Assembly (NCBI RefSeq): GCF_002571385.2
Contig: NW_019218111.1
Coordinates: 221,910 to 285,909, forward strand
From: Stylophora pistillata
Lineage: Eukaryota
Direction: 5' to 3'
Length of the DNA stretch: 64,000 nt
This document shows, piece by piece, positions 22,237 to 42,440 of the stretch; position 1 is the stretch's first letter; every line of letters begins with the position of its first letter. Made by a program: the position numbers and the translations under genes. Under the pieces are notes generated by a model. That model searched no databases, had not been told where the DNA came from, and saw nothing but the letters and a program-made list of their open reading frames with translations.

Positions 22237-22665
22237 TTACACCCAGTCGCCTTTCTCGTCCTTAAGCCTCTCTCGTATCATGTACAATTGTAACAGTTCG
22301 TCCCATCTGCTTGACCTGTCTTCGGAAACACTTCCCACTGTCAAATCATTCAGTTGTTTTGTAATAAACTGTAGTCCTCTCATAACCATCACGGTGCTGA
22401 TTTGTTCTGCACTTCGTGTCAGGGAGCTGGCAGTCCTTCGCGATTTTCTCTGTCGCGATTTCCTGTTTGAGGAACAGTAATCTGCGAACGGGGGAATAAC
22501 CGAGTTGTTCGTTGGTACAAAATAGAAAACCTCTACCAGATCCTGTGACCAGTGAACCCGCTTATGTTTCTTGAAAGGTGGTGTTGGGTCTTCATCTTCC
22601 TCTAGAAGAACGAACTCGTCGCCTGAAAGAATATTAAACTCATCTGGTTCTTGGAGTAAAGCCAT
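22237..22665 (-). CDS. Small intronless protein, putative PP1-docking family member 1 (142 aa from ATG 22665)
   Basis: KRVHWSQDLVEVFYFVP, RGLQFI, RWDELLQLY and C-terminal GDWV. Homologous to four neighbouring ORFs. The ORF-track start at 22752 is a GTG. Confidence 0.8.
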   Translation of the reverse strand: MALLQEPDEFNILSGDEFVLLEEDEDPTPPFKKHKRVHWSQDLVEVFYFVPTNNSVIPPFADYCSSNRKSRQRKSRRTASSLTRSAEQISTVMVMRGLQFITKQLNDLTVGSVSEDRSSRWDELLQLYMIRERLKDEKGDWV

Positions 22666-24128
22666 CTGCAAATTCAAATGTATTCGTCGCTGTTTTTCCT
22701 TTCGAATGATATTTGGATTCCAAAGGTGAACAATTTCGCGGCGGTTCAGCACCGAACAACAATGAAATAGGAAGACTCGTGCGTTTTGCCTATTTTCTGG
22801 AGATTTCTAAATCTCGTTGACAACAGCTCATTCAACTATTATGGTTGGGTTTATCTGCTAGAAGTTCTTCATAAATAATTGATCCAGACTAACAGAGAAT
22901 ACTTTTATGAATTTAGTAAGATCGTAATGTTCGGTTACCATAACAAACCAGGCATAATTACATTCTTGTAGGCTGCCCACACATGCCCTTGTTGTGTCAT
23001 GTGCAAGAAGAGCGATTCCAAGGGCTTCTAATAATTTGCTCAGTTTAGATGTTTACTTCTAAAACGTGACAAGGTTTGTTTTCTCTTCCACTTAAACGTG
23101 CCCTGTTTAATAGCGGTGAACCGTTCATGAGGAGAACGAGTATTCTTAAGTTTGGTGTTAATTGCTGATGTGGCCTTTGTACCGTAACTACGTCATCATG
23201 AGATTGCGAGCTGGATAACGATTGAAATGAGCGTTTTATTTTGATTGGATTCCGCAGCATAAATTTGCCACAAAGTGCAAGTAAACTCGTGCATTTGTTT
23301 AAAATAGTGACATACAATACATAAAAAATGCTAAAAACCATAGAACAATTGTTTCAAGGATATTTGTGTGGCCCAGCCGATCCATCCCTTTTGCTTATGG
23401 ATTTCTCGTTCACCATTCAAAATTTAGTGTAGCTTCAATTATTAATCAGCGATACAAATATAGCTCTTTCTTTGGTGGTAACGTAGGTTCAGAATTAAAT
23501 TTTGACAAAACAAAGAAAGCCACGTGTCCCATGTCTAAATTTTAATTGTTGACAAATCTCAATCTCAAAATTAAATCTTCCTTAAACTCAATGCGGTCAA
23601 ACGCGTACGGTCAAAGGAATCCAGGTTTCGGAGATCGGTTAAACCTCGGCGCTTTGTTTCTCTTTGAGCTGGATGCAAATTACGAACAGTATCTTAAGAG
23701 AGAAATCGCCACTGAAATCATCCAGGTCTCTTCTGTTAGAGTTGAATCTGATGTCAGTCTCAATGTACGGTCAAAGCCAAGGTTCGGAACAACACGAGAT
23801 TTGTTCATTTTCTTTCCCGCTACCCCACCGCTAGTTCGTCTTCAGCGAGGGTCGTAAAAATCAGAACTATCCTTCTCAGAAAGAGGAAGTTGTTATTTTA
23901 ATTGAATTTAGAGATAATTTGCATTAAAATTTATCCTGTTAATTAGGCAGGAATGATTTGACAGACATTCAGATAATCTAAGTTTGCCCCCCTGGTATTT
24001 CCGTCTTCAGTGTTTAGTTCTCTATTCCAACAAGTATGGAATTTTATTAAAGCACCCAATCATCTCAGTTTTGTAGGACGTGAAACACCAATAAACCGCA
24101 CTCCAAAGTTAGAAATCAGAAGCCAGAA

Positions 24129-24540
24129 ATGAAGTCACCTCAGCTTTGCGAAGAGCTAAAACATCCCACTTTTACCAAAATGTTTGAAGAAGTAAAGAAA
24201 TTGCGTGCTCACTGGAACTCGAACTTAATTAACAAAGCTACAAATAGCTCAGCACGCAACAAAATAGTAGGCTCCCTTAAGAGAACCGAGAGAACCGATG
24301 GCAGTTTTGCTCTAACGGATAAAGAAAAAGCACAGATGATGAACGCATACTTTTCGGAGATCCGATATAAGTTTGGTATTACGGGCGTGTTGCTAGATTG
24401 GCTAGGGACTACTTGAGCTGCAGAAAGCAGTTTACTGTGCTTAAGAGAGTCAAATTGACATGTTTCCAGTAACAGCTGGAAACATGTCAGGTCGGTCACA
24501 GCCGGTCTGTTTTAGGCCCTATTTTGTTCACTTTATTTCT
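24129..24540 (+). mobile_element. Decayed LINE ORF2 fragments
   Basis: DKEKAQMMNAYFS and YKFGITGVLLDWL, plus an SVLGPILF-like remnant near 24505-24535. Confidence 0.6.
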
Positions 24541-41700: not shown

Positions 41701-42053
41701 CGCGTTTCCGAGCAGGTTAATGGTTGGCCTGATAATTTTCTGCTATAAAAATGTTCAGAGGAAAAATCTTTTTGTTATAAATTATAAAAGCTCCTTGCTG
41801 CGAAAATTTACATGTTCCCTTATTGACCTCATAATTTTTTGAAGAGATTTACGATGTACTGGTTGATTTTATTGTTTTTTTTTTTCGTAACACTCTCTAT
41901 GCATCAAGCTTCTTCTTGACTGATCGCTAAGTCACTTGTTCCACTATGAACTGCGTCTTTGGAAACTCCTCCGCAAAAGGTTGACGGCAAGGGATAAAAT
42001 TTCCATAAACTGAATAAACCATAAGTGAGATGGACTCCCCGTAAGTCTGTGTC

Positions 42054-42440
42054 CTACTTTATTTTTTCGTCGTCCTCATCATCCGTTGATTCATCGTTAC
42101 TAACTCCTGGTGTTTCGAATAGTTTGTCCCATTCTTTGATCAGATCTTCGTAAGTGACACGTTCTGCGTCAAATGAACCACTTTGTCCATGTCTGAGAAT
42201 GAATTCAAGCCCATTCTGAACAGCGTTCGCGCTCAGTTCGCCCATACTTGTTATGATACGCAGCGGTTTGTCTGTAATTTCGCTTGCCTTTCTTCTTATC
42301 TTGGTCATTTTCTTCTTAAAACTCTTTCGCAGGCGATTTGGAGGCACAAAATAACGAACTTCTTCTAAGTTAACCGCCCACTGGACTCTCTTGTCGGGCA
42401 ATGTGGTGCCTGTGCAGCTATCGTGGTTGAAACTATCCAT
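42054..42440 (-). CDS. Small intronless protein, putative PP1-docking family member 5 (128 aa)
   Basis: KRVQWAVNLEEVRYFVP, LRKSFKKK, NGLEFI, EWDKLFE and an acidic tail. Confidence 0.82.
   Translation of the reverse strand: MDSFNHDSCTGTTLPDKRVQWAVNLEEVRYFVPPNRLRKSFKKKMTKIRRKASEITDKPLRIITSMGELSANAVQNGLEFILRHGQSGSFDAERVTYEDLIKEWDKLFETPGVSNDESTDDEDDEKIK

What the first reader, a model, noticed from the sequence alone, without database searches (positions are those of the whole stretch)
22237..42440. Tandem array of five divergent intronless genes encoding a probable new family of PP1-docking proteins
Seen: five co-oriented minus-strand ORFs of 115-142 aa, spaced about 4-8 kb apart and otherwise very divergent, keep one aligned block: KRVHWSQDLVEVFYFVP, KKVHWCKKLEEIHVFEP, KQVRWSVDLEEIFYFTP, KSVQWSNDLEEVRYFVP and KRVQWAVNLEEVRYFVP. 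The consensus is K-x-V-x-W-x3-L-x-E-[VI]-x-[YV]-F-x-P, usually followed by a basic patch. Member 2 also has SILTK upstream. Established: [KR]-x-V-x-[FW], a downstream hydrophobic pair and an Arg form the RVxF-PhiPhi-R PP1-binding module of PNUTS, spinophilin, GADD34 and RepoMan, and SILK is a second PP1 motif. Inference: an old, locally expanded and probably lineage-restricted family of small disordered PP1 regulators. I do not recognise it as a named family. Motif-only conservation implies purifying selection, and such short single-exon genes are easily missed by annotation.
Basis: partly seen in the sequence, partly recalled or inferred. Interest (0 to 1): 0.87.

Follow-up and report, generated by a model that had tools for sequence, protein, structure and literature searches.

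The report
Unnamed coral family of PP1-docking proteins
Five neighbouring small genes in a stony-coral genome belong to an old, strongly conserved and almost completely unannotated anthozoan protein family whose shared block fits the published docking code for protein phosphatase 1, though neither binding nor expression has been shown.

Summary
The window holds exactly five co-oriented minus-strand ORFs (142, 123, 115, 124 and 128 aa; starts 3.7-7.7 kb apart). Each carries K-x-V-x-W-x3-L-x-E-[VI]-x-[YV]-F-x-P, a pattern found nowhere else in six frames and in none of 50 shuffles.

They are real genes. Orthologues in other corals give dN/dS of 0.04-0.15 for members 1, 4 and 5. Member 5 has 86 consecutive residues identical in three species, with 31 silent changes inside that run. 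Member 2 is relaxed (about 0.5). Member 3 was not tested.

Each gene sits in its own clade with orthologues, so the array is ancient. It is not a recent local expansion.

The family has 68 cluster representatives, and only two database entries were found for it: one "hypothetical", one "unnamed". It has no Pfam or PDB relative.

The block meets the published PP1 grammar: RVxF, ΦΦ after six residues, Phe at +10 as in RRP1B, and a disordered setting. PP1 docking is therefore the best reading (about 0.6) but is untested.

"SILTK" is not a canonical SILK motif. No expression data could be obtained.

The parts
22237..22665 (-). Member 1 (m1) CDS, 142 aa from the first ATG. It has the N-block, a mid helix, the R-W-D-E-L-L-Q-L-Y helix and a -G-D-W-V C-terminus.
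   Evidence: dN/dS is 0.036 against the orthologue on L020, with differences 19/5/62 by codon position.
26313..26684 (-). Member 2 (m2) CDS, 123 aa. It has the N-block and a -E-D-W-V C-terminus, lacks the W-D-E-L-F block, and starts with M-E-H-S-I-L-T-K.
   Evidence: dN/dS is 0.50 against L024, with conservation confined to the N-terminus, the N-block, R-L-E-K-L-S and the tail.
34067..34414 (-). Member 3 (m3) CDS, 115 aa, with the N-block and the R-W-D-E-L-F-E-L-Y block.
   Evidence: It forms its own clade with P0027, support 100/99. Selection was not tested because no orthologue DNA was fetched.
38332..38706 (-). Member 4 (m4) CDS, 124 aa, with the N-block and the Q-W-D-L-L-F-D-I-Y block.
   Evidence: dN/dS is 0.15 against the Tara coral scaffold and 0.059 against Desmophyllum.
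42054..42440 (-). Member 5 (m5) CDS, 128 aa, with the N-block, a basic helix, a Q-N-G-L-E-F-I helix, the E-W-D-K-L-F-E block and an acidic tail.
   Evidence: dN/dS is 0.058-0.059. A run of 86 residues is identical in three species, with 31 silent differences inside it.
22513..22563 (-). m1 N-block, K-R-V-H-W-S-Q-D-L-V-E-V-F-Y-F-V-P (RVxF-like core, PhiPhi at +7/+8, Phe at +10, Pro at +12).
   Evidence: motif rules.
26571..26621 (-). m2 N-block, K-K-V-H-W-C-K-K-L-E-E-I-H-V-F-E-P.
34295..34345 (-). m3 N-block, K-Q-V-R-W-S-V-D-L-E-E-I-F-Y-F-T-P.
38551..38601 (-). m4 N-block, K-S-V-Q-W-S-N-D-L-E-E-V-R-Y-F-V-P.
42342..42392 (-). m5 N-block, K-R-V-Q-W-A-V-N-L-E-E-V-R-Y-F-V-P.
22285..22308 (-). m1 C-block (R-W-D-E-L-L-Q-L), inside predicted helix 116-135.
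34094..34117 (-). m3 C-block (R-W-D-E-L-F-E-L).
38356..38379 (-). m4 C-block (Q-W-D-L-L-F-D-I).
42111..42134 (-). m5 C-block (E-W-D-K-L-F-E-T), inside predicted helix 97-107.
22240..22248 (-). m1 C-terminal D-W-V. The terminal W-V is invariant across the m1-type clades.
26316..26324 (-). m2 C-terminal D-W-V, conserved in its orthologue.
42446..42800 (-). Conserved upstream region of m5, a putative promoter and short leader. It contains a TATA-like AATATAAG at 42494-42501 (-61 from the ATG), TGACGCAA at 42728-42735, TGACGCGA at 42708-42715, CGTCAATGAA at 42650-42659, GGGAAAATCC at 42569-42578 and GAACAAATGAATTAAT at 42689-42704.
   Evidence: Identity to the Tara coral scaffold is 91-93%, against a 65-78% background. 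The blocks are invariant in three species including Desmophyllum. Function is inferred, not shown.

Best explanation
The five ORFs are real single-exon protein-coding genes. They are five ancient paralogues of an unnamed anthozoan family of small (about 100-200 aa), largely disordered proteins, kept as a tandem array.

Each protein most likely docks on the catalytic subunit of protein phosphatase 1 through its N-terminal block:
- K-[KR]-V-[HRQ]-W would fill the RVxF groove.
- After a six-residue acidic spacer, [VI]-x at +7/+8 would add a beta-strand at the PhiPhi site.
- The invariant aromatic at +10 would fill the 'Phe' pocket.
- A Pro at +12 and, in most members, a basic stretch follow.

The rest of the protein then gives each holoenzyme its property (targeting, substrate choice or inhibition). 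These parts are a basic amphipathic segment, a Q-x-G-L-x-F-I helix and the W-D-E-L-F-E-L-Y helix. Some clades add a free -[DE]-W-V carboxy-terminus that could engage a second partner.

Shown here: gene reality, strong purifying selection, age of the paralogues, motif grammar and predicted disorder. Inferred: PP1 binding and everything downstream of it.
For: Gene reality:
- dN/dS is 0.036 for m1, 0.058-0.059 for m5 and 0.059-0.151 for m4. dS runs from 0.25 to above 2, and differences pile up at third codon positions.
- m5 has 86 consecutive residues identical in three corals, with 31 silent differences inside the run.
- The coding regions are 93-96% identity peaks against a 65-78% background.
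- The m5 upstream region, with its TATA-like element, is conserved in three species.
- The m5-m4 order and orientation are conserved in Desmophyllum pertusum and in a Tara coral scaffold.

Family:
- The profile search finds 68 representatives.
- Across 196 proteins the N-block is present in 170 and the C-block in 154.
- Each window gene forms its own clade with orthologues, support 95-100.

PP1 grammar:
- All five cores fit [K/R]-X0-1-[V/I/L]-X-[F/W] (PMC10731240).
- The engineered core K-N-V-H-W retains about 4 nM binding to PP1 (PMC11536154). m1 and m2 have K-x-V-H-W.
- PhiPhi is expected 5-8 residues after RVxF. Here it comes after six.
- The Phe pocket is used two residues after PhiPhi. 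In RRP1B the RVxF Phe is F686 and the pocket Phe is F696, a spacing of +10. The family aromatic is also at +10: F in 138 and Y in 32 of 170.
- The x position is H, R or Q in 166 of 170.
- The block is modelled as extended, non-helical chain within a protein that has no compact fold (pTM 0.21-0.28), as in known PP1 regulators.
Against:
- The structural papers state that identifying PhiPhi-type motifs from sequence alone is 'nearly impossible' (PMC9813921).
- The second PhiPhi position is Arg or His in m2, m4 and m5 (VR, IR and IH are common family-wide).
- The Arg motif is absent from m1 and m2.
- A 27-residue profile of the block retrieves no PP1 regulator from PDB sequences, though it is too short for that test to be informative.
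- Such strong whole-length conservation (86 identical residues) is more than a docking motif needs. The main function could lie in the helical half and a different partner.
- No expression evidence was obtained. The short contigs carrying these genes are metagenomic or of unknown library type.
Confidence: 0.6

Rival explanations
1. The family is real and under selection, but the N-terminal block is a docking or beta-strand-addition motif for a partner other than PP1, or forms part of a fold-on-binding interface made together with the helical half. On this reading the resemblance to RVxF-PhiPhi-Phe is coincidental.
For: Conservation extends far beyond the block: an 86-residue identical run in m5 and a 31-residue identical run over the m1 mid helix. 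The second PhiPhi position is often Arg or His. No sequence link to any solved PP1 regulator was found. The literature warns about sequence-only prediction of these motifs.
Against: The block meets every written positional rule for PP1 docking at once: core, spacer length, Phe at +10, acidic spacer, basic N-flank and a disordered setting. The [KR]-x-V-x-[FW] core is near-invariant across more than ten deep clades. No alternative partner is known for such a motif (own knowledge).
Confidence: 0.3
2. The proteins are very divergent members of an already named small PP1 inhibitor family: inhibitor-3/PPP1R11-Ypi1 (which also uses a K-V-x-W core), inhibitor-2, or inhibitor-1/DARPP-32.
For: They share small size, predicted disorder and a W-type RVxF core. 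An R-R-x-A-S site lies 32-33 residues after the docking Trp in the m1 and m5 clades. This recalls the kinase-switched inhibitor-1/DARPP-32 design (own knowledge).
Against: No Pfam family, including the inhibitor families, matches any of the five even at E<=10. Nothing relevant appears in PDB sequence searches with two family profiles. The R-R-x-A-S site is present in only 27 of 122 sequences. The W-D-E-L-F-E-L-Y helix and the W-V tail have no counterpart in those families (own knowledge).
Confidence: 0.05
3. The ORFs are not functional protein genes. They are chance ORFs, pseudogenes, or non-coding or transposon-derived sequence.
For: None carries a database name. No expression evidence was obtained. 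m2 shows relaxed constraint. Transposon remnants lie between the genes.
Against: dN/dS is 0.04-0.15 with saturated dS and a third-position bias. Reading frames are intact in several species. Synteny is conserved. There is one copy per clade per genome segment, not dispersed repeats. No transposon or viral Pfam domain is present in the ORFs, and no Rfam family matches.
Confidence: 0.03

Closest known systems
PNUTS (PPP1R10) PP1-docking string, RVxF-PhiPhi-Phe-Arg
   Same: It has a Trp-type RVxF core (human 398-TVTW-401), a downstream PhiPhi, then a Phe-pocket residue (F413) and an Arg (R420), all in a disordered segment (PMC10731240). The engineered K-N-V-H-W version binds PP1 at about 4 nM (PMC11536154). 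The family block has the same order of elements, and three of the five members have a basic residue 4-7 positions after the Phe.
   Different: There is no sequence homology outside the motif. PNUTS is a large multidomain nuclear protein, and its Trp-to-Phe spacing is +12 against +10 here. The family proteins are 100-200 aa with their own C-terminal helices.
RRP1B, RepoMan/Ki-67 and spinophilin docking segments
   Same: All use RVxF followed by PhiPhi[xF]. The RVxF-Phe to pocket-Phe distance in RRP1B (F686 to F696) is +10, identical to the family. Spinophilin T461 and RepoMan F404 use the same pocket.
   Different: These are unrelated large scaffold proteins. Their additional contacts are not evident here: the KiR/beta-gamma pocket, the SILK and AF pockets, and the R-W string with a Trp about 20 residues after RVxF (Phactr1 LIRF 519-522 and W542). 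The family's conserved second Trp lies about 80 residues downstream.
Inhibitor-3 (PPP1R11 / yeast Ypi1)
   Same: It is a small (about 126 aa), disordered PP1 regulator with a K-K-V-x-W core followed by an acidic stretch (own knowledge, not verified here).
   Different: The Pfam model for that family does not match any of the five at E<=10. The family has a PhiPhi-x-F extension, the W-D-E-L-F-E-L-Y helix and, in some clades, a W-V C-terminus. It appears restricted to anthozoans, whereas inhibitor-3 is pan-eukaryotic (own knowledge).
Inhibitor-1 / DARPP-32 (PPP1R1)
   Same: The design is an N-terminal RVxF dock plus a basophilic-kinase site a few tens of residues downstream (own knowledge). The m1 and m5 clades carry R-R-x-A-S 32-33 residues after the docking Trp.
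   Different: The site is present in only 27 of 122 family sequences. There is no Pfam match. No evidence was obtained that it is phosphorylated.

Membership tests
RVxF-type PP1-interacting proteins (functional class) | RVxF core [K/R]-X0-1-[V/I/L]-X-[F/W], with X not Pro | tested here: met
   All five window proteins match: KRVHW, KKVHW, KQVRW, KSVQW and KRVQW. Family-wide, position 1 is K in 153 and R in 15; the aromatic is W in 164 and F in 6; x is H, R or Q in 166 of 170. The rule is quoted from PMC10731240.
RVxF-type PP1-interacting proteins (functional class) | PhiPhi motif 5-8 residues C-terminal to RVxF | tested here: inconclusive
   The spacing is right: six residues, with [VI] at +7 in all. 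The +8 residue is hydrophobic in m1 and m3 (VF, IF) but Arg or His in m2, m4 and m5 (IH, VR, VR). Family-wide, VR is 38, VI 32, IF 29 and IR 16.
RVxF-type PP1-interacting proteins (functional class) | Phe-pocket residue two positions after PhiPhi (PhiPhi[xF]) | tested here: met
   There is an aromatic at +10 from the Trp in all five. Family-wide it is F in 138 and Y in 32 of 170. RRP1B has the same +10 spacing, F686 to F696.
RVxF-type PP1-interacting proteins (functional class) | Arg motif a few residues after the Phe (hPNUTS R420, seven after F413) | tested here: inconclusive
   A basic residue lies 4-7 positions after the Phe in m3, m4 and m5. There is none within that range in m1 or m2.
RVxF-type PP1-interacting proteins (functional class) | Motif lies in an intrinsically disordered region | tested here: met
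   The AlphaFold2 models of m5 and m1 show no secondary structure over the block and no compact fold (pTM 0.28 and 0.21). This is a prediction, not a measurement.
RVxF-type PP1-interacting proteins (functional class) | Physical binding to PP1c that is lost when the V and F/W of the core are mutated | not testable with these tools
   No complex prediction or experiment was available.
SILK-containing PP1 regulators | SILK motif G/S-I/V-L/V-K N-terminal to RVxF | tested here: not met
   m2 has S-I-L-T-K, with a Thr where the Lys should be. The other members have T-L-T-K, S-L-R-R or nothing comparable. The definition is from PMC9813921. H-S-I-L-T-K is nevertheless conserved in the m2 orthologue.
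RVxF-PhiPhi-R-W string regulators (Phactr, spinophilin/neurabin, PNUTS, PPP1R15) | Trp motif about 20 residues after RVxF that contacts PP1, followed by a groove-remodelling helix | tested here: not met
   In Phactr1 the RVxF is at 519-522 and the Trp at 542. In the family the next conserved Trp is about 80 residues downstream (W39 to W121 in m1, W21 to W104 in m5).
Named small PP1 inhibitor families in Pfam (inhibitor-3/Ypi1, inhibitor-2, inhibitor-1/DARPP-32, PPP1R15 PP1-binding region) | Match to the family's Pfam profile | tested here: not met
   No such family is reported for any of the five proteins at E<=10. Only noise hits appear: ODAPH, DUF2514 and PBD, all below their cut-offs.

The most novel reading that the evidence does not exclude
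This is an anthozoan-specific, multi-clade family of PP1 regulators. Its conserved C-terminal module (the W-D-E-L-F-E-L-Y helical hairpin plus, in some clades, a free -[DE]-W-V tail) would define a new kind of PP1 holoenzyme or inhibitor. At least one member would be driven by an unusually conserved TATA/TGACG-type inducible promoter, in a neighbourhood of innate-immunity-type genes (cGAS-like Mab-21, DED/PYRIN). That would make it a lineage-specific phosphatase switch in coral stress or immune signalling.
Probability: 0.15. Interest if true: 0.65.

Novelty: new member of a known kind. Interest (0 to 1): 0.45.

Why it matters
PP1 gains its specificity from hundreds of unrelated docking proteins, and almost all known ones come from vertebrates, yeast or parasites. 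This family has at least ten deep clades and is constrained as tightly as core cellular proteins (86 identical residues at saturated synonymous sites). Yet it is nearly absent from coral gene catalogues.

If it binds PP1, it adds a whole set of lineage-specific phosphatase regulators to cnidarian signalling. It would also supply natural, non-phosphorylatable K-x-V-H-W docking strings like the ones recently engineered as PP1 tools.

Even if the PP1 reading fails, this is a clear case of short single-exon genes that annotation pipelines miss. It also gives a ready profile for recovering them.

Tried and rejected
1. Pfam scan of the five proteins at E<=10 returned only sub-threshold noise.
2. PDB sequence searches with three profiles (whole family with 48 and 122 sequences, and the N-block alone) gave nothing relevant. 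Beta-spectrin repeats appeared at E 0.015-0.025 over the helical half. I treat that as helical W-x-x-L-L resemblance, not homology.
3. I did not search structure libraries with the AlphaFold2 models, because pTM of 0.21-0.28 makes such matches meaningless.
4. Expression and splicing:
   - The exact m5 protein is on about 33 Logan contigs shorter than 2 kb. The six examined are collinear with the window and unspliced. I could not establish whether those runs are RNA or DNA, and the run accessions are not in the searchable literature.
   - The short ENA contigs turned out to be metagenomic.
   - The acceptor-like 'ttgcag' before the m1 ATG is not conserved in another species, and no spliced contig was seen. 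A 5' intron is therefore rejected.
   - The exact 142-aa m1 product is not on record.
5. Walking the Desmophyllum scaffold found no third copy within 10 kb beyond the m4 orthologue. Conservation of the full five-gene array outside the window species is therefore not shown.
6. The crayfish protein P0058, the only named non-cnidarian hit, is a zinc-finger repeat protein with R-K-V-R-L-S-N-D-L-x-E-x-x-D-I-T-P repeats. Each scores 7-8 bits or less and has Leu where the docking aromatic should be, so I do not count it as a family member.
7. R-R-x-A-S as a family-wide kinase switch is rejected. It occurs in 27 of 122 sequences only.
8. No Rfam family matches across 21000-44000.
9. The motif strings are absent from the literature, and no coral RVxF paper exists.

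Operator notes:
- N runs (3719-4440, 15691-16627, 44312-44314, 59462) were left untouched.
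Full report
**Observation.** The region holds five complete, co-oriented minus-strand ORFs:

| Member | Coordinates | Length |
|---|---|---|
| m1 | 22237-22665 | 142 aa from the first ATG |
| m2 | 26313-26684 | 123 aa |
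| m3 | 34067-34414 | 115 aa |
| m4 | 38332-38706 | 124 aa |
| m5 | 42054-42440 | 128 aa |

Their starts are 3.7-7.7 kb apart. The pattern K.V.W...L.E[VI].[YV]F.P occurs exactly five times in the six-frame translation of the whole 64-kb window. All five are in these ORFs, and none appeared in 50 shuffles. A family HMM run over the six-frame window finds no sixth or degenerate copy. The paralogues are only 25-35% identical.

- a second block near the C-terminus, [RQE]-W-D-x-L-[FL], in m1, m3, m4 and m5;
- a -D-W-V carboxy-terminus shared by m1 and m2.

**These are genes.** A Tara Pacific coral metagenome scaffold (L001-L003) is collinear with window 43580-36838 at 78.5% identity. It carries orthologues of both m5 and m4. 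In a sliding-window comparison the two coding regions are 93-96% identity peaks on a 65-78% background.

| Comparison (NG86) | dN/dS | Note |
|---|---|---|
| m1 vs L020 | 0.036 | dS 1.9; differences 19/5/62 by codon position |
| m5 vs Tara scaffold | 0.058 | |
| m5 vs Desmophyllum pertusum | 0.059 | dS 1.24 |
| m4 vs Tara scaffold | 0.151 | |
| m4 vs Desmophyllum | 0.059 | |

In m5, 86 consecutive residues are identical in all three species. The same codons carry 31 silent differences between the window and Desmophyllum.

So constraint covers the whole protein, not only the motif. m2 is the exception: dN/dS is 0.50, with conservation confined to H-S-I-L-T-K, the N-block, R-L-E-K-L-S and F-G-E-D-W-V. 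m3 could not be tested.

The 370 bp upstream of m5 keeps long invariant blocks in three species. These include a TATA-like AATATAAG 61 nt before the ATG, two TGACG[C/T] sites, CGTCAATGAA and a block containing GGGAAAATCC. This fits a TATA-type promoter with a short leader.

No intron is indicated:
- Contigs from the same and other species are collinear through the ORFs and their flanks.
- The acceptor-like 'ttgcag' before the m1 ATG is not conserved.

**The family.**
- A profile of the five proteins, scored against 1.84 billion cluster representatives, finds 68 proteins at E<=1e-3. Nearly all are 95-250 aa.
- In the 196 family proteins collected here, the N-block is present in 170 and the C-block (consensus N-K-x-W-D-E-L-F-E-L-Y) in 154. 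Both are present in 132, and 41 end in W-V.
- Many members also share a basic amphipathic stretch after the N-block and a mid helix, Q-x-G-L-x-F-I.
- In a maximum-likelihood tree of 66 sequences, each window gene falls in its own clade with orthologues from other species (support 95-100). At least five further clades have no member in the window.
- The m5-then-m4 order and orientation recur in Desmophyllum pertusum. Other genomes also carry several members on one contig.

The array is therefore a set of ancient paralogues. It is not a recent local expansion.

**Who has it, and is it named.**
- The only source names found are 'hypothetical protein OS493_028627 [Desmophyllum pertusum]' and 'unnamed protein product [Porites evermanni]'.
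- Thirty clusters were looked up, and none carries a name except a crayfish repeat protein that is not a member.
- One of the most divergent members (P0084) lies next to an intronless GPCR whose only named relatives are sea-anemone proteins at about 32% identity. This hints that the family reaches beyond stony corals within Anthozoa.
- No Pfam family matches, and no PDB chain matches by sequence.
- Neither motif string appears in the searchable literature.
- The window's own species was not determined. By its relatives it is a stony coral.

**Structure.** AlphaFold2 with family alignments gives no compact fold: m5 has pLDDT 70 and pTM 0.28, m1 has pLDDT 63 and pTM 0.21.
- The N-terminal part, including the conserved block, is extended (pLDDT about 80 but no secondary structure).
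- The C-terminal half forms two or three helices, the last carrying the W-D-E-L-F block.

**Mechanism.** I compared the block with written rules, not with memory:
- RVxF is [K/R]-X0-1-[V/I/L]-X-[F/W].
- PhiPhi lies 5-8 residues C-terminal to it.
- A Phe pocket is filled two residues after PhiPhi: hPNUTS F413 against W401, RepoMan F404, RRP1B F696, and spinophilin T461.
- An Arg can follow, as in hPNUTS R420 (PMC10731240).
- In RRP1B the RVxF Phe is 686 and the pocket Phe is 696, a spacing of +10. The authors state that 90% of the 17 solved holoenzymes use RVxF plus PhiPhi[xF] (PMC9813921).
- Changing the PNUTS core to K-N-V-H-W preserves about 4 nM binding (PMC11536154).

The family block fits these rules:
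- It has a canonical core in all five proteins and in about 168 of 170 family members.
- The x position is H, R or Q in 166 of 170, so it is almost never phosphorylatable.
- It has a six-residue acidic spacer, [VI] at +7, an aromatic at +10 and Pro at +12.
- In m3, m4 and m5 a basic residue lies 4-7 positions after the Phe.

Weak points:
- The +8 residue is Arg or His in m2, m4 and m5.
- m1 and m2 lack the Arg.
- The same papers caution that sequence-only prediction of PhiPhi motifs is unreliable.

I therefore take V/W-dependent docking on PP1c as the best-supported mechanism, at about 0.6. The helical half would supply targeting, substrate selection or inhibition. This part is inference.

**Comparisons that fail.**
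- 'SILTK' in m2 does not meet G/S-I/V-L/V-K.
- The R-W extension of Phactr/spinophilin-type strings needs a Trp about 20 residues after RVxF. Here the next conserved Trp is about 80 residues away.
- An R-R-x-A-S site 32-33 residues after the docking Trp recalls inhibitor-1/DARPP-32, but it is limited to 27 of 122 sequences.

**Rivals.**
- The block binds another partner (0.3). This is favoured by conservation far beyond the motif, but no alternative partner is known.
- The proteins are divergent members of a named small PP1 inhibitor family (0.05). There is no profile match.
- The ORFs are not functional genes (0.03). This is contradicted by dN/dS, intact frames and synteny.

**Limits.** No expression evidence could be obtained:
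- The contigs carrying the exact m5 protein are of unknown library type.
- The short ENA contigs are metagenomic.

Operator notes were followed:
- N runs in the window were not filled.

**Verdict.** This is a real, old, strongly constrained and essentially unannotated anthozoan gene family with a textbook-grade PP1 docking string plus its own C-terminal module. It is a new family within a known kind of system (RVxF-type PP1-interacting proteins). Interest is moderate: valuable for cnidarian annotation and PP1 biology, but not surprising in principle, and its central functional claim is still untested.

Noticed in passing
window 29366-30640: A near-perfect large inverted repeat lies in the long gap between m2 and m3. 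The arms are 29366-29986 and 30017-30640, 98% complementary, with 30 nt between them. Each arm carries an ORF starting M-S-V-A-R-S-E-Q-F-R-Q. It is either a foldback-type mobile element or an assembly artefact.
   Followed up: partly
window 45142-47684 (+) and 61483-61953 (-): The array is flanked on one side by a Mab-21/cGAS-like nucleotidyltransferase gene. Its exons at 45142-45501, 46568-46855 and 47178-47684 match Mab-21 and Mab-21_C (best E 8e-31). Farther on there is a death-effector-domain/PYRIN-like exon (E 3.5e-21). Both are innate-immunity-type genes.
   Followed up: partly
window 19332-19772 (+) and 11061-11468 (-): On the other side of the array there is an FAD-dependent oxidoreductase (DAO) exon and a reverse-transcriptase fragment. 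Pfam hits to ribosomal L28 and THAP also occur somewhere among the window's ORFs but were not located.
   Followed up: partly
window 41485-41707 (-): A block about 350-570 nt downstream of the m5 stop codon is 90-92% identical to the Tara coral scaffold, well above background. It could be a conserved 3'-UTR element. No Rfam family matches.
   Followed up: partly
L015 and L016 (Desmophyllum pertusum scaffold MU826853.1, 277-298 kb and 804-824 kb): The m5-m4 segment is present twice on one scaffold at about 95% identity, either a haplotig or a segmental duplication. In one copy (L015) the m4 orthologue is split by a frameshift.
   Followed up: partly
P0060 (128 aa, ENA contig of 2256 nt): One family protein carries two complete N-blocks in tandem (residues 13 and 47, both K-R-V-x-W-A-F-N-L-E-Q-I-x-Y-F-F-P). 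This is an internal duplication of the putative docking module.
   Followed up: partly
P0058 (Cherax quadricarinatus XP_053646980.1, 583 aa): This crayfish zinc-finger protein has many repeats of R-K-V-R-L-S-N-D-L-x-E-x-x-D-I-T-P that weakly resemble the N-block (8 bits or less each). They have Leu in place of the docking aromatic. The resemblance is unexplained and is not counted as family membership.
   Followed up: partly
window 42446-42800 (-): The m5 upstream region has three TGACG/CGTCA sites and a GGGAAAATCC block, all invariant or nearly so in three corals. The m2 upstream region also has three TGACG/CGTCA half-sites and a CACGTG. These may reflect CREB/ATF-type or Rel/NFAT-type inducible control, which was not tested.
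   Followed up: partly
N-termini of m2, m3 and m4 and many relatives: A recurring N-terminal element, M-(x)-[ST]-L-[TRQ]-[KR]-S...S-C, appears as M-S-L-R-R-S-M-S-C, M-T-L-T-K-S-L-S-C or H-S-I-L-T-K. It precedes the docking block by about 15-30 residues. It is not a canonical SILK motif and its role is unknown.
   Followed up: no
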